A stretch of 64,000 bases of DNA from positions 22,444,001 to 22,508,000 of the forward strand of contig NC_043022.1 of NCBI RefSeq assembly GCF_006345805.1, given 5' to 3'. Source of the DNA: Octopus sinensis. Its lineage: Eukaryota. Numbering within the stretch: the first letter of the stretch is position 1; each line of letters opens with the position of its first letter. The position numbers and the translations under genes were made by a program. Below the pieces are notes generated by a model. That model did no database searches. It was given only the letters and a program-made list of their open reading frames with translations, and had not been told where the DNA came from. Positions 1,548 through 17,519 of this stretch are shown here, piece after piece.

Positions 1548-1815
1548 TTACTCCTCCTGCTTTTCCCCTATCTCTCCTCTCCCATTGTTTGTTGGCCCAG
1601 TAGCCACTCTAGAGCAGCCAACATTTAATTGTTCATGTGAGAAGCATAACTCGTCCAATTGAAGTCCTATTACAGACAGTGTTTGACCCTGAGATTTATT
1701 GATACACATTGCAAAGTTGATGCAAATAGGAAATTGCACTCTTCTGAATGAAAAAGGGATTTCTGCTACCAATGGAACGAGAGGAATTCTGGGTATGAAA
1801 ACATCCTCTTATTTT
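1548..1815 (-). mobile_element. Helitron RepHel PIF1-family helicase C-terminal remnant
   Basis: Minus strand reads EDVFIPRIPLVPLVAEIPFSFRRVQFPICINFAMCINKSQGQTLSVIGLQLDELCFSHEQLNVGCSRV, matching PIF1 motifs QFP..FAMTINKSQGQT and FSHGQLYVA.SRV. Confidence 0.9.
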
Positions 1816-1819
1816 CCAC

Positions 1820-2168
1820 ATCCAGAGACTGACTTCCGTGCCGGTGGCACGTAAAAAGCACCATCCGAATTGTGGCCGATGCCAGCGCTGCCTTGGCTGG
1901 CTTCCGTGCCGGTGGCACGTAAAATGCACTAATCCGATCGTGGCCATTGCCAGCCTCACGTGGCACCTGTGCAGGTGACATGTAAAAAGCACCCACTATA
2001 CTCACGGAGTGGTTGGCATTAGGAAGGGCATCCAGCTGTAGAAACACTGCCAGCTCAGACTGGAGCCTGGTGCAGCCTTCTGGCTTCCCAGATCCCCGGT
2101 CGAACCGTCCAACCCATGCTAGCATGGAGAACGGACGTTAAACGATGATGATGATGATGATGATGATG
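1820..2168 (+). mobile_element. RTE LINE 3'-end copy with (GAT)n tail, inserted into the Helitron remnant
   Basis: Tandem GGTGGCACGTAAAAAGCAC units then ...CATGGAGAACGGACGTTAAACGATGATGATG; the same units continue from RTE coding sequence at 14995-15200 and 37258-37890. Confidence 0.85.
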
Positions 2169-2169
2169 A

Positions 2170-2482
2170 GAGAGGATGGTGGCTTCAATAACATGTGGCA
2201 TCATTTTCTTTACCACCAGGCATGTCCCATTGCAAAATGTTGGCGGATCCAGTTCCTCAATAACATTACTGGAGTTCTCACTTTAAGTTCCTCTCTGTGG
2301 GGAGGTAGTCCTGGAGGCTCCAATAAATTGAGAAATTCTGTTGGATAATTTACCACCTCTTCTGGATCTGGGATTGTATCAATTGTCTGATAGATGTGAG
2401 GACTTCGAGGAAGGTACTGAAGCAGCTGCTCATTAATTTTACTTACAGTACTGTTTTTTGGAGCCAGTATGTTCATCCACAT
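2170..2482 (-). mobile_element. Helitron PIF1 helicase central remnant
   Basis: ILAPKNSTVSKINEQLL...YPTEFLNLLEPPGLPPHREELKVRTPVMLLRN, then (frameshift) DPPTFCNGTCLVVKKMMPHVIEAT: typical PIF1/Helitron helicase segment, collinear with 1548-1815. Confidence 0.9.
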
Positions 2483-2712
2483 GGCAAGCTGGCAGAAACG
2501 TTAGCACGCTGGGCGAAATGCTTAGCGGTATTTCGTCTGCCATTACGTTGTGAGTTCAAATTCCGCCGAGGTCAACTTTGCCTTTCATCCTTTCGGGGTT
2601 GATAAATTTAAGTACCAGTTACGCACTGGGGTAGATGTAATCGACTTAATACCTATGCCTGTCCTTGTTTGTCCCCTCTATGTTTAGCCCCTTGTGGGCA
2701 ATAAAGAAATAA
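2483..2712 (+). mobile_element. tRNA-derived SINE, family A
   Basis: A/B-box-like head (GGCAGAAACGTTAGC...GAGTTCAAATTCC), central GAGGTCGACTTTGCCTTTCATCCTTTCGGGG block, tail GGGCAATAAAGAAATA; many near-identical copies in the window. Confidence 0.9.
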
Positions 2713-3264
2713 GTATGTTCATTCACACAGCCAATTGAGATTGTGATAATTTTTCAACCAATGGAGGATCTCCTCTTTGGATACATTATGTCAAGAAATA
2801 TGATGAAATAAAACAAGACAACAAATGTGCATTGATTATGAAATGACAATAAAAAGAGCTAAATAATATCAATATCTTAACAAATTTTAAGAAATACATA
2901 CAATGAACTGAAATGACACTGGTATGTTGATAATTGTCAATAAAAACATTTTTGTCCATCAGATGGCCCCGGCTGAGATAATGGTTGCTAACCCATGAAG
3001 AAGCACTAATCTAATCTTAGGTATTCTGTCGCATACTCTGACTACCTCGATTATCTTATCCACTCATTTCTCCACAAGAAGTATACCCACACCCCCAACC
3101 CCGTCAGTGTTTCCTGCTCAGAAAATCTTGTACCTGTGTTCTTTGCCTGTGAGGAACCTAGCGGAACCTCCTCTCCACCTTACTTCTTTGAGACGGCATA
3201 TATCGACACATCTCTGTTCAAGCATCTCAACAATCTCACCAGACCTACCTTTCAGGTGAAATGC

Positions 3265-3452
3265 TCAGCAGTATTTCGTCTGCTGTTACGTTCTGAGTTC
3301 AAATTCCGCCGAGGTCGACTTTGCCTTTCATCCTTTCGGGGTCGATAAATAGAGTACCAGTTACGCACTGGGGTCGATGTAATTGACTTAATCCCTTTGT
3401 CTGTCCTTGTTTGTCCCCTCTATGTTTAGCCCCTTGTGGGCAATAAAGAAAT
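3265..3452 (+). mobile_element. SINE family A, 5'-truncated
   Basis: Same central block and tail as 2483-2712. Confidence 0.85.
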
Positions 3453-3685
3453 ATATATACACTTATATATACATACATTTGTAGGTATATATATACACAT
3501 ACTATATATATGTATATACCCACACATACATATATGTATATACACACACACACATACATATATATACACACACACACATACATTTTTATATATATATATC
3601 TAATGTAGGATAAAATTTTTTTCCAAAAAAAATTTTATCAATGGCCAGCATATTAAAAAATACCTTTAAAGGTTAAATTTATAAA

Positions 3686-4103
3686 CAATTCATAAATAAG
3701 GGCAAACGAAAAAAATTCTAATGCCAAAAAATTGGACATATTGTCCATTAACCATATAATTTTTTCACAATACGCACGCTACACAAAAAAAGGTCGACAG
3801 AAATTTCTAAAAAATTCCATTATTACCATATCGGACCGATTTCAGGGTTAGCTTATAACAGCCCTCCCTTCGTCAGTGATACATGTGGCAAAAGAAATAA
3901 ATGAGATACTTACTCATACCCATGGAAGAAGCAAACACTAAGTCATGAGCACAATTAAGTACCCCAAATACATCCAAAATAGAAATAATTTTTTCGAGTA
4001 GCGTGCGTATTGTGAAAAAATTATATGGTTAATGGACAATATGTCCAATTTTTTGGCATATTTGGCATTAGAAATTTTTTCGTTTGCCCTTATTTATGAA
4101 TTG
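3686..4103. repeat. ~100-bp inverted repeat pair (3686-3782 / 3998-4103) enclosing a hammerhead motif; Penelope pseudo-LTR-like
   Basis: Left arm CAATTCATAAATAAGGGCAAACG...CAATACGCACGCTAC is the reverse complement of the right arm apart from a 9-nt indel. Confidence 0.85.
3824..3881 (-). ncRNA. Type I minimal hammerhead ribozyme (Penelope-type)
   Basis: Minus strand: UAUCA-CUGACGA-AGGG(18 nt)CCCU-GAAA-UCGG-U-CCGA-UA|UGGUA. Conserved core is intact; stems I, II and a palindromic stem III can pair; AUA triplet, predicted cut between 3829 and 3828. Confidence 0.8.
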
Positions 4104-4391
4104 TATATATATATATATGTATACATACACACAGACACAAACACACATACTAGATATACTCACCTATGTTGTAGTCTGTATATGATCACACAACTTACAA
4201 AAAATAGCAGCCAATCTTTACATTTACACTCTGTGATTGTGAAAGAATGAAGTACTCATTGGATAATGACATTCTAGATACACTATGTGTGATTGAAAGC
4301 ACAGGATGGTCATGTCTGGAACATCTTTGGCTATACACCTGCAAGAATAGCACTGACCAGTGACTGAATAACAACAACAACATCAATGGTT

Positions 4392-4667
4392 TTAGCTCTG
4401 CTTTGGAGAAACTTTGCTTGTTAGAAATTTATATCCGTTTTTAGTCATTTCAAGAAAATAATGGAGTATTTTGAGTAGACCCGTGTATTGTTTTTCTCGT
4501 GCCCACATTCCAACACCCTTCTTGTCAGCCTGTGTTTCAAACTTGATAAGATTTTCAAGATATTTGGTCTGTTTTGGATTCAGAGAGACGTTTATGTTCT
4601 CTTCAAGCTTGCTGGTCCCAGTAACTACCATTTTCTCATTGATGTTCACCTTTCTCCATAGGTAACC
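4392..4667 (-). CDS. C3orf33: C3orf33-like protein, exon 5 (last coding exon)
   Basis: Acceptor TTTTGTAG|GGT, phase 0; GYLWRKVNINEKMVVTG...LIKFETQADKKGVGMWARE resembles the recalled human C3orf33 segment NLNEEILRRG...LLKAELTALKKGEGIW; ends at a stop. Confidence 0.85.
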   Translation of the reverse strand, partial: GYLWRKVNINEKMVVTGTSKLEENINVSLNPKQTKYLENLIKFETQADKKGVGMWAREKQYTGLLKILHYFLEMTKNGYKFLTSKVSPKQS

Positions 4668-8070: not shown

Positions 8071-9470
8071 GGTGGCAAGCTGGCAGAAACGTTAGCATGC
8101 CGGGCAAAATGCTGAGCGGTATTTCGTCTGCCGCTACGTTCTGAGCTCAAATTCCGCCGAGGTCAACTTTGCCTTTCATCCTTTTGGGGTCGATAAATTA
8201 AGTACCAGTCACGCACCAGAGTCAATGTAATCGACTTAATACCTAAGCCTGTTCTTGTTTGTCCCCTCTATGTTTAGCCCCTTGTGGGTAATAAAGAAAT
8301 AGGTATTTCGTCTGCCGTTACATTCTGAGTTCAAATTCCACCGAGGTCGACTTTGCCTTTCATCCCTTTCGGGGTCGATAAATTAAGTACCAGTTATGCA
8401 CTGGGGTCAATGTAATCGATTTAATCCCTTTGTCTGTCCTTGTTTGTCCCCTCTATGTTTAGCCCCTTGTGAGCAATAAAGAAATAAGATAGACAGACAG
8501 AAAGACAAATGGATTGATTGTCCAATCAATAGTGCTTATGTGGATTTTCATATCTTCTCAAGAATCAAATGTTTCAGAAAAATATAAAATTTTCAAAATA
8601 ACCATGGAATTTCCATGGCTACAGCTAGTAGTAGTTGTTGTTGTTGTTATTGTTATTATTATTATTATTAAGGCAGTGAGTGGGCAGAATCATTAGCACA
8701 CTGGACAAAATACTTGGAGGTATTTTGTCCATCACTACGTTCTGAGTTCAAATTCCGCCAAGGTCGACTTAACCTTTCATCCTTTTGGGATCGATAAATT
8801 AAGTACGAGCGAAAAACTGGGACTGATGTAATCAACTTATCCCCTCCCCACTAAAATGGCTGCTCTTGTGGCAAAATTTAAAACTATTATTATTATTATT
8901 ATTAAGGTGGTGAGCTGGCAGAATCATTAGCACGTTGGACGAAATGCTTAGCAGTATTTCGTCCATTGCTCTGTCCCAAGTTCAAATTCCACCAAGGTCA
9001 ATTTTGCCTTTCATCCTTTTGGGGGGAGGGTCGATAAATTAAGTACCTGTTGAACATTGGGGTCAATGTAATTGATGCATCCTCTTCCCACAAAGTTGAA
9101 GCCTTGTACCTCCAGAAGTAAGGATTATTATTATTATTACTATTATTATCAATGCAGCGAGCTCACTGAACCATTAGCATGTCAGGCAGAATGCTTAGCA
9201 GCATTTTGTCTGTCTTTATGTTCTGACTTTAAATCCTGCTGATTAAGTACCAGTGAAACACTAGGTCCAATGTAATCGGCTAGACCCCTACCCCCAAATT
9301 TCAGGCCTTGTGCTTATAGTTGAAAGGAGGAGGAGGAGGATTCTTCCAGAATCATTAGCACATCAGGCGAAATTCTTAGCAGTATTTCACCTGTCACTAC
9401 ATTCTGAGTTCAAATTCCACTGAGGTCGACTTTGCCTTTCATCCTTTCAGGGTTGATAAATTAAGTAATT
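8071..9470 (+). mobile_element. Head-to-tail cluster of six family A SINE copies in C3orf33-like intron 2
   Basis: Copies start near 8071, 8302, 8670, 8905, 9150 and 9345; all on the plus strand; several separated by (ATT)n. Confidence 0.85.
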
Positions 9471-14994: not shown

Positions 14995-16567
14995 GGCCAC
15001 GTTCGGATGGTGCTTTTTATGTGCCACCGGCACAGAAGCCAGTCGAGTCGGCGCTGGCTACGGCCACGTTCGGATAGTGCTTTTTATGTATCACAACTAC
15101 TATTTCCATTGATATTTATTTCGATGTTCATGTTCATGTTCATGTACTTGACTCAACAGGTCTCCTCAAGCACAGCGGGACATTCTGGGATCCAGGGTAC
15201 TTTGAATGGGCAGGGGCTATGCGGAACTGGTGCAGAAAGCAGCCCGGGTCTTTGCAGTCACAGCATATCTCCAGAGATCTCGGTCCTTCGCCATTGCCTC
15301 AGTGAGGCCCAACGCTCTGAGGTCATGCTTGACTACCTCATCCCATGTCTTCCTGGGTCTACCTCTCCCCCTGATACCTTCAACTGTTTGGGAGTGGCAC
15401 TTCTTCACACATCTCTCCTCATCCATCCGCAGTACATTACCATACCATCGCAAGCGTCGCTCTTGCACACCACATCTGATGCTTTCTTATGTCCAGCATT
15501 TCTCTCAGGGTGCTTACACTCTGTCGTGTGTGCACACTGACATTACACATCCAGCGGATCATGCTAGCTTCATTTCTACGCATGTCCTCTGCAGTCACAG
15601 CACATGTTTCACTACCGTGAAGCATGGCAGTTCACACACATGCATCATACAATCTACCTTTCACTCTGAGCGAGAGACCCTTTGTCGCCAGTAGGGGTAG
15701 GAGCTTTCTGAACTTTGCCCAGGCTATTCGTATTCTAGTGGTGATACTCTCTGAGCATCCACCTCCACTACTAACTTGGTCACCCAGGTAGCGGAAACTA
15801 TCAACTACTTCCAGTTTCTCTCCCTGGAGTGTGATGGAATCTGTTTTCTGAGTGTCTGTGGTGTCTATTGTCCCTGTGCATCTGCCGCACATGAAAGCTA
15901 TCTTATCAGTTAATTTCCCTTTAATGTTGCTGCACCTCTTATGCATCCATAGCTTACATTGGGTGCATCTTATGGAGTTTCTACCTACACCTTTTCTACA
16001 GATCGAGCAGGGCCACCTGCCCGAGGGTGTGTGTCCTGAGTTCGCCTTTCTGCTTACTATAACTTTGGTCTTTGCTACATTTACTCTAAGGCCCTTTGAT
16101 TCTAACCCTTGCTTCCACACCCGAAATTTCTTTTCTAGTTCCGGTAGTGATTCTGCTATGAGAGCCAGGTCATCAGCATAGAGGAGCTCCCAGGGGCATC
16201 CTGTTTTGAATTCCTCTGTTATTGCCTGGAGGACTATGATGAATAAAAGGTGACTGAGGGCTGAGCCTTGGTGTACACCTACTTCTACCCGGAATTCTTC
16301 ACTATATTCATTGCCAATCCTAACCTTGCTGACAGCCTCTCTGTATAGAGCCTGTACAGCTCTTATTAGCCATTCGTCAATCTCCAGTTTCCGCATCGAC
16401 CACCAGATAAGGGATCGGGGAACCCTGTCAAAGGCTTTCTCCAAGTCCACAAAAGCTATGTAGAGGGGTTTATCTTTAGCTAGGTACTTCTCCTGCAGTT
16501 GTCGGACCAGGAATATAGCATCAGTGGTGCTTCTACCTGGCACAAAACTGAACTGCATCTCATCTAA
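14995..16567 (-). mobile_element. RTE LINE: reverse transcriptase, C-terminus and 3' UTR (5'-truncated, frameshifted)
   Basis: 308-aa ORF with QFSFVPGRSTTDAIF, FVDLEKAFDRVPR, GVHQGS, LLYADD; downstream RLRWYGNVLRM...GRGRPRKTW. Confidence 0.97.
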
Positions 16568-17519
16568 GCAACAAAAAGAGAGAGAATTTTCCCCACAGTA
16601 ACTGCAGTGAATTTGCCTTGTAGCAGTTGAAATATATCACAAATATATTTTAACTAACCTGCTATAAAACAGTGCTTGGTTAATATTAATGCTAAAACAC
16701 TGATTGGCACTAATATGGTAATTTCCATATCCTTAGCAGGCTACTGTCACAAATCAGTCAATGTTGTTGAAGCTATAGCTTTGATAAGGTCTGAACAGAG
16801 CTGCCTCCCTTAGATATTTCCCATTGATAATGGCTAAAGAGCAAGAACCATCGATGTCTGGGAATCCTGACAGGGGATGACATTGAACAGATGTGGTGCT
16901 TTTAAACCTCTTACTATAAGAGAGGGGGGACAAACACAGACACACACATACGACGGGCTTCTTTCAGTTTCCGCCTACAAAATCCACTCACAAGGCTTTG
17001 GTCGGCCTGAGGCTATAGTAGAAGACACTTCCCCAAGGTGCCACGCAGTGGACTGAACTTGGAACCAATGTGGTTGGTAAGCAAGCTACTTACCACACAG
17101 CTCCGTTGGGGGTGGGGGGGTGAACCCCACTGTACTCTTTCACCACAACTTTCTATCACTCTTTCTTCCTACTTCTGCCGCAAAGCAGAGGAACCATGGT
17201 GTAACCCACTATGGTGTGATAAACTTTCAGACCCTAGTCTAGATTGCGAATCCTCTGTACTCCAGGATGGATTCAGCTCTCCACCCGTTAAAAGCCACCG
17301 TTTACGGAATGAGGATAACAACGTAGCTTTCACACCCATGCAACTGCGAGTCTATCGCGTGTGGTGGGTGGATCTTCAAGTTGCCACACGCATTCTTAGT
17401 AGCTTAGAGTAGGCTCGAATTAGAGATTATTCTTTGTGGCTAAAGGCGTGAGTCCTGATTGGAAGAAGAAGACACCAACAGACACTAACAGCAACACCAA
17501 CAGACACAGCACCTCAAAA

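What the first reader, a model, noticed from the sequence alone, without database searches (positions are those of the whole stretch)
3824..3881. Intact minimal hammerhead ribozyme in sense orientation ~510 nt past the C3orf33-like stop codon
Seen: full core (CUGACGA...GAAA...UA), stem I AUCA/UGGU plus U-A, stem II AGGG/CCCU, palindromic stem III AUCGG-U-CCGAU, on the same strand as the mRNA. By eye I found no canonical AATAAA or ATTAAA between the stop (4392) and the ribozyme. Established: Penelope-like elements carry minimal type I hammerheads with palindromic stem III that often cleave as dimers, and a 3' UTR hammerhead is known to lower expression of rodent Clec2 genes. Inference: the host 3' UTR may run through it, making a transposon-derived ribozyme a possible cis-regulator or 3'-end former.
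Basis: partly seen in the sequence, partly recalled or inferred. Interest (0 to 1): 0.72.

Follow-up and report, generated by a model that had tools for sequence, protein, structure and literature searches.

The report
Transposon-borne hammerhead ribozyme motif beside octopus C3orf33
The hammerhead ribozyme motif is real, but it came in on a roughly 500-base mobile element that inserted downstream of the C3orf33 gene in the Octopus sinensis/vulgaris lineage only, and nothing suggests it regulates the gene.

Summary
A complete type I hammerhead (HHR) lies on the minus strand at 3881->3824, 511 nt past the C3orf33 stop codon. It is the only one in the window and is far rarer than chance.

The window is Octopus sinensis, and O. 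vulgaris carries the identical motif. The motif sits in the centre of a ~504-bp insertion (4103->3600). That insertion has 107-115-bp inverted arms that are ~97% complementary, an 85-nt tail on one side only, and a (TA)n/(TG)n microsatellite target.

O. bimaculoides has an empty site at the orthologous position, with an uninterrupted microsatellite. Inverted 5'-truncated twin copies, a one-sided tail, an AT-rich target and an HHR with a palindromic helix III together match the published signature of Penelope-like element (PLE) insertions.

Read-through by the host 3'UTR is plausible, because no AAUAAA or AUUAAA occurs before 1700, but it is untested. A regulatory or 3'-end-forming role is unsupported:
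- the insertion is young;
- the monomer HHR fold is predicted to be about 5e-5 of the ensemble;
- trans dimerisation has a predicted Kd of about 1 mM;
- no partner copy exists in the window;
- the 10.1-11.1 pair is A-U rather than G-C.

Verdict: a new member of a known kind, of low to moderate interest.

The parts
3824..3881 (-). Complete minimal type I hammerhead ribozyme motif: helix I 3881-3877/3828-3824, core CUGACGA 3876-3870, helix II 3869-3844, GAA 3843-3841, helix III 3840-3830, A17 at 3829
   Evidence: Sequence read. Motif scans found only this hit in the window.
3828..3829 (-). Predicted self-cleavage site, between A17 (3829) and U1.1 (3828)
   Evidence: Follows from hammerhead numbering applied to the sequence. 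Cleavage was not tested.
3830..3840 (-). Palindromic helix III, AUCGG-U-CCGAU. As a monomer it forms 4 bp plus a GUC triloop. In a dimer it forms a 10-bp intermolecular helix with a central U-U mismatch.
   Evidence: The dimer MFE forms exactly this intermolecular helix. There is no second copy in the window.
3989..4103 (.). Left inverted-repeat arm. In the PLE model this is the short, inverted, 5'-truncated twin copy read on the + strand. It carries a 9-bp duplication relative to the other arm.
   Evidence: the repeat finder pairs I1 and I2 and the arm alignment.
3792..3988 (-). Unique 197-nt centre of the insertion, holding the HHR: 107 nt upstream of the motif and 32 nt downstream
3685..3791 (.). 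Right inverted-repeat arm. In the PLE model this is the 3'-terminal part of the longer, HHR-sense copy.
3600..3684 (-). One-sided 85-nt 'tail' outside the right arm. It contains a 14-bp hairpin (3639-3609) and is part of the segment missing in O. bimaculoides.
   Evidence: Empty-site alignment and the fold of the whole insert.
4104..4150 (.). Upstream part (in gene sense) of the (TG)n(TA)n microsatellite that was the insertion target
3451..3599 (.). Downstream part of the same microsatellite. It holds a TATAAA at 3590 followed by a GU-rich repeat, which aligns with a TATAAA at L121 15710 in O. bimaculoides.
4392..4667 (-). Last coding exon of C3orf33 (SNase/TNase-like C-terminus), with the stop codon at 4394-4392
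   Evidence: tblastn of P0009 gives 100% identity. Pfam SNase scores 21.6 bits.

Best explanation
The motif is a genuine hammerhead-family sequence that arrived as cargo of a mobile element, not a host-evolved regulator.

A ~504-bp non-coding fragment inserted into a (TA)n/(TG)n microsatellite about 290 nt downstream of the C3orf33 stop codon. It came from a Penelope-like retroelement or a PLE-mobilised non-autonomous derivative. The insertion happened after the O. sinensis/O. vulgaris lineage split from O. bimaculoides.

Inferred mechanism of insertion: the PLE endonuclease cut both strands of the AT-rich target, and both 3' ends primed reverse transcription of element RNA. This gave two inverted, 5'-truncated copies that meet head to head.
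- The longer copy (3988->3600, minus strand) runs through the HHR and begins at the distal RT start, which explains the 85-nt tail.
- The shorter copy (3989->4103, plus strand) stops before the HHR.

In the parent element the HHR, with its palindromic helix III, is built to act as a dimer between tandem copies, possibly with protein help.

Here it is a single copy, buried in the loop of a ~115-bp RNA hairpin and out-competed by an alternative local fold. If the C3orf33 3'UTR does read through it, which is inferred and not shown, the ribozyme is expected to be essentially silent.

Shown: the motif, the inverted-repeat anatomy, the empty site, and the presence in the sister species. Inferred: the PLE mechanism, transcription through the element, and lack of cleavage.
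For: Motif anatomy and rarity:
- The motif is complete, unique in the window and rare by chance.

Insertion anatomy and age:
- The inverted arms 3685-3791 and 3989-4103 are ~97% complementary, with the HHR in the 197-nt centre.
- The window is 100% identical to O. sinensis CM016884.1. O. vulgaris (99.3% identical) has the same element and an identical HHR.
- The O. bimaculoides orthologous locus aligns at ~91% from the stop codon into the microsatellite and lacks the whole 504-509 bp. The joined flanks of the window align colinearly with it.
- The arms differ by only 1-3 substitutions and one 9-bp indel, whereas the flank differs from O. bimaculoides by ~9%. That fits an insertion after the split.

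Published PLE signature:
- Inverted 5'-truncated copies forming inverted repeats, an optional tail at one end only, and a bias for (TA)n microsatellites (PMC8557442).
- Cleavage and extension of both DNA strands at AT-rich sites, and two RT start sites that explain the tail. [quoted passage not shown]
- Short helix I, long helix II and palindromic helix III in metazoan PLE HHRs, most of them single motifs from truncated copies (PMC4209133; PMC6765202).

Predicted inactivity:
- The HHR fold is -10.9 kcal/mol against an MFE of -16.6, so P is about 5e-5, and lower with flanks.
- Dimer Kd is about 1 mM, so under 0.2% is dimeric at 1 uM or below.
- There is no partner palindrome or second HHR in 64 kb.
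- The whole insert folds into a 115-bp stem at -220 kcal/mol, z = -20.7.
Against: - No RT/GIY-YIG ORF adjoins the element, and no other copy could be retrieved: none in the 64-kb window nor in about 53 kb from O. bimaculoides and Argonauta. Family membership therefore rests on architecture alone.
- The tail is 85 nt, against the 30-40 nt described for PLEs.
- The HHR departs from the PLE consensus. The nucleotide after A9 can pair with a U before G12, so the closing pair of helix II reads A10.1-U11.1 instead of the conserved G-C with a bulged nucleotide.
- Long terminal inverted repeats and a TA-rich target are also what a MITE or foldback DNA transposon would show.
- Inactivity is predicted from nearest-neighbour energies. 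These ignore tertiary contacts, proteins and co-transcriptional folding.
Confidence: 0.62

Rival explanations
1. The C3orf33 3'UTR runs through the element, and the HHR self-cleaves as a monomer, as an intermolecular dimer or with protein help. This would lower mRNA levels or create the 3' end, analogous to the Clec2 3'UTR hammerhead.
For: - The motif is in sense orientation with a complete core.
- No canonical poly(A) signal lies between the stop codon and the motif in O. sinensis, and none lies before the microsatellite in the element-free O. bimaculoides locus.
- A conserved TATAAA plus GU-rich repeat just downstream of the insertion point would place the whole element inside the 3'UTR.
- HHR-bearing PLE derivatives that overlap exons in Xenopus are mostly in 3'UTRs (bioRxiv 10.64898/2026.07.22.740005).
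Against: - The insertion is lineage-specific and young, with an empty site in O. bimaculoides, so there is no evidence of selection.
- The active monomer fold is strongly disfavoured.
- Dimer Kd is about 1 mM, and there is no cis partner.
- The 10.1-11.1 pair is A-U.
- Metazoan PLE HHRs are inactive as monomers and weak as dimers in vitro. For one PLE no RNA-seq ends were found at the cleavage site.
- Non-canonical signals inside the element (CATAAA at 4098, TATAAA at 3683) could end transcripts differently.
Confidence: 0.07
2. The element is a MITE or foldback-type DNA transposon with ~110-bp terminal inverted repeats and a TA target. It happens to carry, or once captured, a hammerhead-like sequence. 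The 85-nt 'tail' would then be unrelated filler or a second event.
For: - The arms are long and near-perfect.
- The element is compact and AT-rich and sits in a TA repeat.
- The same microsatellite in O. bimaculoides attracted a different small palindromic element.
- No retroelement ORF or poly(A)/3' hallmark is visible.
Against: - The insert is asymmetric: the tail lies outside one arm only and is absent together with the rest from the empty site.
- The HHR with a palindromic helix III is a hallmark of PLEs and retrozymes.
- Unequal inverted twins with a one-sided tail are described as specific to PLEs.
Confidence: 0.18
3. The hammerhead is a chance match within an unrelated repeat.
For: - Loose HHR descriptors do hit random sequence: 16 hits per 136 Mb, which scales to hundreds per octopus-sized genome.
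- Rfam models do not score the motif.
- The G10.1-C11.1 pair is not conserved.
Against: - Stems of 5/4(+4)/5 bp with an 11-nt palindromic helix III were never seen in 136 Mb of random sequence.
- The motif lies in a mobile element whose architecture independently points to the one transposon class known to carry such ribozymes.
- Rfam also misses a textbook PLE minimal HHR.
Confidence: 0.05
4. If the region is transcribed, the feature that matters to the host is not the ribozyme but the ~115-bp near-perfect RNA hairpin formed by the arms. It could be a substrate for ADAR editing or for the small-RNA machinery. This does not exclude the best explanation.
For: The whole-insert fold is -220 kcal/mol, z = -20.7, with the arms fully paired. 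That cephalopods edit RNA extensively is established knowledge, not tested here.
Against: There is no transcript, editing or small-RNA data. Transcription through the element is itself unproven.
Confidence: 0.08

Closest known systems
Minimal type I hammerheads of metazoan Penelope-like elements (Cervera & de la Pena 2014, PMC4209133; reviewed in PMC6765202)
   Same: Type I topology, a short 5-bp helix I without a defined loop 1, an extended helix II, a palindromic helix III suited to dimer formation, occurrence as a single motif in a truncated element, and no loop-loop tertiary motifs.
   Different: Helix III is longer than usual: a 5+5-nt palindrome rather than 0-2 bp plus a small palindromic loop. 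The nucleotide after A9 is not bulged but can pair with a U, so the closing pair reads A10.1-U11.1 instead of G-C. No PLE ORF is attached, and no family of copies was seen.
PLE insertion architecture: pLTRs, inverted 5'-truncated twins, one-sided tail, microsatellite or AT-rich targets (Craig et al. 2021, PMC8557442; Frangieh et al. 2024, PMC11167929)
   Same: Inverted arms flanking a unique centre, an extension at one end only, a (TA)n target, and an HHR roughly 100-230 nt from the insertion's 3' end.
   Different: The insert is only ~504 bp with no RT or GIY-YIG coding sequence. The tail is 85 nt rather than 30-40 nt.
Metazoan non-LTR retrozymes (Cervera & de la Pena 2020, PMC7229834; Li et al. 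2026 bioRxiv 10.64898/2026.07.22.740005)
   Same: A short, non-coding, low-GC element carrying a type I HHR. These are thought to derive from PLE pLTRs, solo 'monomers' exist, and exon-overlapping copies tend to lie in 3'UTRs.
   Different: The defining tandem head-to-tail repeats are absent here. The copies here are inverted, not direct.
Discontinuous hammerhead in rodent Clec2 3'UTRs (Martick et al. 2008; cited from memory and from the reference list of PMC4209133)
   Same: An HHR in sense orientation downstream of a stop codon that could cut the mRNA.
   Different: The Clec2 ribozyme is split by a long insertion, has tertiary contacts, is efficient, and is conserved across species. This one is continuous, minimal, dimer-type and lineage-specific.
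SINE-like HHR elements (Schistosoma Sm-alpha) and the tRNA-headed HHR repeat seen here in O. bimaculoides (L121 16950-17260)
   Same: A ribozyme carried by a short non-autonomous retroelement.
   Different: The window element has no tRNA-like head and no sequence similarity to the O. bimaculoides repeat.

Membership tests
Hammerhead ribozyme (any type) | Conserved core C3-U4-G5-A6-N7-G8-A9 ... G12-A13-A14, A15.1-U16.1, H17 not G, and three helices around the core | tested here: met
   CUGACGA, GAA, A15.1-U16.1 and A17 are present, with helices of 5, 4(+4) and 5 bp.
Hammerhead ribozyme (any type) | A match to curated covariance models (Rfam Hammerhead_1, _3, _II, HH9, HH10) | tested here: inconclusive
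   No hit at the gathering threshold or at E<=10, even on 106 nt. A textbook PLE minimal HHR from O. bimaculoides is also missed, so the models do not cover this subclass.
Hammerhead ribozyme (any type) | Mg2+-dependent self-cleavage at H17 | not testable with these tools
   This needs in-vitro transcription. Thermodynamic prediction disfavours the active monomer.
PLE-type minimal HHR (Cervera & de la Pena 2014) | Type I, a short helix I (4-5 bp) and a longer-than-usual helix II | tested here: met
   Helix I is 5 bp. Helix II is 4 bp, a 2x2 internal loop and 4 bp.
PLE-type minimal HHR (Cervera & de la Pena 2014) | A palindromic 15.2-16.2 / loop 3 that allows a dimeric helix III | tested here: met
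   AUCGGUCCGAU is palindromic. The dimer MFE uses it as a 10-bp intermolecular helix.
PLE-type minimal HHR (Cervera & de la Pena 2014) | An unpaired nucleotide between A9 and 10.1, and a conserved G10.1-C11.1 pair | tested here: not met
   The sequence is A9-A-GGG...CCC-U-G12. Either the closing pair is A10.1-U11.1 with no bulge, or the A is bulged and G-C is kept but an extra U precedes G12. Neither reading matches the consensus.
PLE-type minimal HHR (Cervera & de la Pena 2014) | Many genomic copies forming consensus families with compensatory changes | not testable with these tools
   Only the orthologous O. vulgaris copy, which is identical, could be retrieved. No eukaryotic genome search was available.
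Penelope-like element insertion | An inverted 5'-truncated twin copy forming inverted repeats around a unique part | tested here: met
   Arms 3685-3791 and 3989-4103, with a 197-nt centre.
Penelope-like element insertion | An optional short extension ('tail') at one end only | tested here: met
   An 85-nt extension (3684-3600) lies outside the right arm only and is missing together with the element from the empty site. It is longer than the 30-40 nt described.
Penelope-like element insertion | An AT-rich or microsatellite target | tested here: met
   The element is inserted in a (TA)n run of a (TG)n(TA)n array that is continuous in O. bimaculoides.
Penelope-like element insertion | An ORF with a telomerase-like RT and a GIY-YIG endonuclease, or demonstrable homology to the pLTR of such an element | tested here: not met
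   The insert has no ORF. The only RT in the window (15632-16558) reads as LINE-type from its YADD motif, which is my reading and was not scanned against a family library. It is 12 kb away. Homology to an octopus PLE pLTR could not be searched. The insert is therefore filed as PLE-like by architecture, not as a proven PLE.
Metazoan non-LTR retrozyme | Head-to-tail tandem repeats of a 170-400-nt unit, each with a type I HHR | tested here: not met
   There is no tandem array at the locus apart from microsatellites. The window holds a single HHR, and the copies are inverted.
Host-gene 3'UTR hammerhead (Clec2 type) | Location inside the mature 3'UTR, and conservation across species beyond neutral expectation | tested here: not met
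   Conservation fails: the element is absent from O. bimaculoides and Argonauta, and identity with O. vulgaris is uninformative at a 99.3% background. Inclusion in the 3'UTR could not be tested.
MITE / foldback DNA transposon | Terminal inverted repeats at both extreme ends, flanked by a fixed-length TSD | tested here: inconclusive
   The arms are TIR-like, but the right arm is not terminal because of the 85-nt tail. A TSD cannot be read inside (TA)n.

The most novel reading that the evidence does not exclude
A recent PLE-type insertion has placed a working ribozyme in the C3orf33 3'UTR of O. sinensis and O. vulgaris only. The ribozyme could be helped by a chaperone or PLE protein, or presented in the loop of the 115-bp hairpin. 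This lineage would then have acquired ribozyme-mediated (and/or dsRNA/ADAR-mediated) control of the mRNA that O. bimaculoides lacks. That would be a natural before-and-after pair for studying how transposon ribozymes are domesticated.
Probability: 0.05. Interest if true: 0.6.

Novelty: new member of a known kind. Interest (0 to 1): 0.27.

Why it matters
On present evidence this is an ordinary consequence of transposon activity. Hammerheads are known cargo of Penelope-like elements and their derivatives, and such elements are already reported in 3'UTRs of other animals.

Its modest value lies in three things:
- It is a cleanly dated presence/absence case, with the element in O. sinensis and O. 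vulgaris and an empty site in O. bimaculoides. This shows the characteristic PLE insertion scars in a cephalopod.
- It offers a ready natural control for asking whether a single minimal hammerhead, or the long RNA hairpin around it, affects a host mRNA.
- It shows that Rfam hammerhead models miss PLE-type minimal ribozymes in octopus genomes, so Rfam-based counts of hammerheads in cephalopod genomes probably underestimate them.

Tried and rejected
- **Rfam.** The whole window at the gathering threshold, 3600-4150 at E<=10 and 3800-3905 at E<=10 gave no hammerhead hit, only microsatellite-driven miRNA look-alikes. This was judged uninformative after the control.
- **IMG/VR.** An exact-pattern scan for the core plus helix III gave 0 hits.
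- **Metagenome scan.** A slightly looser pattern gave more than 120 hits. All were bacterial protein-coding sequence sharing a ...VRKEIGPIA... peptide, with no helix I or II pairing. I read this as an acyl/acetyl-CoA-synthetase-like motif.
- **The search for homologous proteins.** The last exon found nothing. Exons of the neighbouring MFS transporter found nothing. That second search was an attempt to reach more octopus species through the convergent neighbour gene. The orthologues were reached instead through the full HMMER search and the cluster listing.
- **Splice-site idea.** The GTGAGT at 4161-4156 could have marked a 3'UTR intron. This was rejected because the hexamer is not conserved: O. 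vulgaris has GCGAGT and O. bimaculoides has GCAAAT.
- **Other copies of the element.** BLAST against the window and against L121-L124 found none beyond the orthologous O. vulgaris copy. Copy number is therefore unknown.
- **tRNA-derived SINE head.** None is present in or near the element.
- **Bacterial promoter/terminator scan.** Irrelevant for a eukaryote and at chance level.
- **Papers.** Supplementary HHR alignments of PMC4209133 are not held. Lunse et al. 2017 is not held.
Full report
**1. The observation**

On the minus strand, window 3881->3824 reads UAUCA-CUGACGA-AGGG-AG-GGCU-GUUAUA-AGCU-AA-CCCU-GAA-AUCGG-U-CCGAU-A-UGGUA. This is a formally complete type I hammerhead.
- Helix I has 5 bp, one of them G-U.
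- Both core boxes are present.
- Helix II has 4 bp and continues for 4 more after a 2x2 internal loop.
- The A15.1-U16.1 pair closes an 11-nt palindromic helix III.
- A17 sits before the predicted scissile bond at 3829|3828.

My own descriptor scans found it as the only full hammerhead in the window on either strand. That held when I allowed a bulged nucleotide, no helix III, or the U3-A8 core variant.

Chance does not explain it.
- Two of 300 dinucleotide shuffles of the window gave any motif with stems of at least 4/3/3 bp.
- In 136 Mb of Markov sequence there were 16 such loose hits and none with the observed 5/4/5 bp.

Rfam models do not report the motif at any threshold. The same models also miss a textbook PLE-type minimal hammerhead that I found in O. 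bimaculoides, so this negative result is uninformative.

The first AATAAA and ATTAAA on that strand below the stop codon are at 1700 and 1629.

**2. Host gene and organism**

The last-exon ORF (4392-4649) weakly matches the C-terminal half of the Pfam SNase domain. A full HMMER search found a 239-aa protein that is 93% identical, named by its sources 'protein C3orf33 [Octopus bimaculoides]'. Its 90% cluster also holds P0009, the C3orf33 protein of O. sinensis and O. vulgaris. P0009 is exactly the protein spliced from five window exons on the minus strand: 11587-11504, ~9958-9890, 7914-7771, 6346-6188 and 4667-4392.

Fetching the encoding contigs gave the following.
- The window is 100% identical to O. 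sinensis CM016884.1.
- O. vulgaris OX597839.1 is 99.3% identical.
- A convergent MFS transporter gene ends just outside window position 1.

**3. What surrounds the motif**

The hammerhead sits in the 197-nt centre of an inverted repeat. The arms are 3685-3791 and 3989-4103, about 97% complementary, with one 9-bp duplication in the left arm. On the right, an extra 85 nt (3684-3600) carrying its own 14-bp hairpin separates the arm from the flank. On the left, the arm abuts the flank directly. Both flanks are the same kind of (TG)n(TA)n microsatellite.

**4. Comparative test**

In O. bimaculoides the region from the stop codon into the microsatellite aligns at ~91%. The alignment stops exactly at the outer edge of the left arm. 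The microsatellite there is continuous, and neither the element nor the motif occurs anywhere in the 25-kb locus, nor in the Argonauta hians locus.

Joining the window flanks (...4104 + 3594...) gives a sequence that aligns colinearly with the O. bimaculoides site through '(TA)n-AAATGTATGTGT'. So ~504-509 bp (4103->3600: arms, centre and tail together) is an insertion in the O. sinensis/O. vulgaris lineage. The alternative, a precise deletion in O. bimaculoides, is much less likely.

O. vulgaris carries the element with an identical hammerhead and a single 4-bp indel upstream of it. At 99.3% background identity this says nothing about selection.

The two arms differ far less than the two species' flanks do. 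This fits twin copies made in one event after the split.

**5. What kind of element**

The literature describes a signature peculiar to Penelope-like elements (PLEs).
- Insertions are 5'-truncated.
- They are often accompanied by an inverted 5'-truncated copy, so inverted repeats flank a unique part.
- They carry an optional 30-40-bp tail at one end only.
- They prefer microsatellites such as (TA)n (PMC8557442).

Biochemistry of an Anolis PLE shows that the enzyme cuts and extends both strands of AT-rich DNA. It starts reverse transcription at two internal sites, and the interval between them is the 'tail'. The hammerhead cut site lies 26 bp into the ORF and RT starts 111-118 bp into it, so by my arithmetic the hammerhead is about 90 nt upstream of the RT start (PMC11167929).

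Metazoan PLE hammerheads are minimal type I motifs with a short helix I, a long helix II and a palindromic helix III. They mostly occur as solitary motifs in truncated copies (PMC4209133; PMC6765202).

The octopus insert shows all four architectural marks and carries such a ribozyme 143 nt from the arm end and 228 nt from the tail end. I therefore read it as two cDNAs primed from the two target strands.
- The longer copy (3988->3600, minus strand) starts at the distal site, which gives the tail, and runs through the hammerhead.
- The shorter copy (3989->4103, plus strand) starts at the proximal site and stops before the hammerhead.

Limits of this reading:
- No RT/GIY-YIG ORF is attached.
- No other copy could be retrieved, because no eukaryotic genome search was available.
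- The tail is longer than described.
- The helix II closing pair deviates from the consensus: A-U, or a bulged A plus an extra U, instead of a bulge plus G10.1-C11.1.

A MITE or foldback DNA transposon remains a live rival. The asymmetric tail argues against it.

**6. How it most likely behaves in the host transcript**

Whether C3orf33 mRNA includes the element is unknown. The element-free O. bimaculoides flank also lacks AAUAAA or AUUAAA before the microsatellite. A TATAAA followed by a GU-rich repeat lies just downstream of the insertion point in both species (window 3590, L121 15710). If that is the ancestral poly(A) signal, the whole insert now lies in an ~820-nt 3'UTR. This is inference. 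The element also brings CATAAA (4098), TATAAA (3683) and GATAAA (3639), any of which could end transcripts elsewhere.

Even if transcribed, the ribozyme is predicted to be nearly silent.
- The hammerhead fold costs -10.9 kcal/mol against -16.6 for a competing fold that sequesters the CUGA box. Its ensemble share is about 5e-5, and lower with flanks.
- The dimer that PLE hammerheads are built for does form in silico through the palindrome. Its predicted Kd is about 1 mM, which means under 0.2% dimer at 1 uM or below.
- There is no second hammerhead or matching palindrome in 64 kb.
- The arms are predicted to zip into a ~115-bp duplex (-220 kcal/mol, z = -20.7), leaving the motif in a multiloop.

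Published experiments agree.
- A metazoan PLE hammerhead was inactive as a monomer and weak as a dimer or trimer.
- The Anolis PLE hammerhead appears to be protein-assisted.
- No RNA-seq reads were found ending at that PLE's cleavage site.

These predictions ignore tertiary structure, proteins and co-transcriptional folding, so they lower the probability of activity but do not exclude it. If the region is transcribed, the long hairpin may matter more than the ribozyme, as a possible ADAR or small-RNA substrate. This was not tested.

**7. Comparison with known systems and verdict**

The motif works like, and most probably descends from, the PLE or retrozyme class of dimer-type minimal hammerheads.
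- It fails one sequence criterion of that class (the bulge plus G10.1-C11.1).
- It lacks the tandem organisation that defines non-LTR retrozymes.
- It is unlike the conserved, discontinuous Clec2 3'UTR ribozyme.
- HHR-bearing PLE derivatives in 3'UTRs have already been noted in Xenopus.

Read-through by the 3'UTR is plausible but untested, and a regulatory or 3'-end-forming role is unsupported. This is a new member of a known kind, with low to moderate interest. Its main use is as a dated presence/absence pair for testing what a solitary transposon hammerhead, or its hairpin, does to a host mRNA.

Noticed in passing
L121 (O. bimaculoides CM046626.1) 16950-17260, + strand: A SINE-like repeat in the same intergenic region. 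It has a tRNA-like head (weak Rfam tRNA hit, 14.3 bits), an (AAT)n run and a body. The body carries a textbook PLE-type minimal hammerhead at about 17175-17222: acac-CUGAUGA-A-GGCUGG...CAGCC-GAAA-CG-U-U-GUGUU. It has the bulged A after A9, the G10.1-C11.1 pair, the palindromic ACGU and a 5-bp helix I. A partial tandem duplicate lies at 17066-17126 beside an assembly gap. It is not present in the window or the other loci, and Rfam does not detect the ribozyme.
   Followed up: partly
window 1650-2480, minus strand: A degenerate Helitron/Pif1-helicase-like coding remnant (translated motifs ...SQGQTLSV...FSHEQLNVGCSRV...; my reading, not checked against a family library). It is interrupted by a repeat at about 1840-2180 that has several copies in the O. 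bimaculoides locus. The first canonical AATAAA (1700) and ATTAAA (1629) downstream of C3orf33 lie inside it.
   Followed up: partly
window 3260-3445 and 2490-2715 (minus strand); also about 8400-8530: Copies of a repeat, probably a SINE, that gives the recurrent spurious ORF '...QGAKHRGDKQGQTKGL...'. Together with the helicase remnant it fills the space between the microsatellite and the next block that is colinear with O. bimaculoides (window 1604->1).
   Followed up: no
L121 15971-16085: In O. bimaculoides the same microsatellite received a different small palindromic, MITE-like element (CACGAGGGGTGTATGAAG...CTTTTCATACACCCCTCGT), followed by further lineage-specific sequence. The microsatellite downstream of C3orf33 looks like a recurrent insertion target.
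   Followed up: no
window 15632-16558, minus strand: A 308-aa ORF with reverse-transcriptase motifs (…FVDLEKAFD…YADDLAL…) and a C-terminal cysteine-rich stretch. From these motifs I read it as a LINE-type RT, not a PLE. It was not scanned against a family library and is unrelated to the hammerhead element.
   Followed up: no
window 45900-46650 and 49000-51450: Very long TA/TG/CA-type microsatellite arrays, which give spurious ORFs of 150-390 aa made of Y/I/C/V/H/T repeats.
   Followed up: no
window 4156-4161, minus strand: AG|GTGAGT, a good 5' splice-site look-alike 230 nt past the stop codon. It is not conserved (GCGAGT in O. vulgaris, GCAAAT in O. bimaculoides), so it is probably meaningless.
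   Followed up: yes
window 43441-43857, plus strand: An exon-like ORF with a proline-rich stretch, an 18-residue polyglutamine run and '...[25 protein letters not shown]'. It probably belongs to another host gene and was not identified.
   Followed up: no
window 4089-4146, minus strand: Rfam mir-297/mir-466 look-alike hits (37 bits against a gathering score of 90). They are caused by the TG/TA microsatellite and are an artefact.
   Followed up: yes
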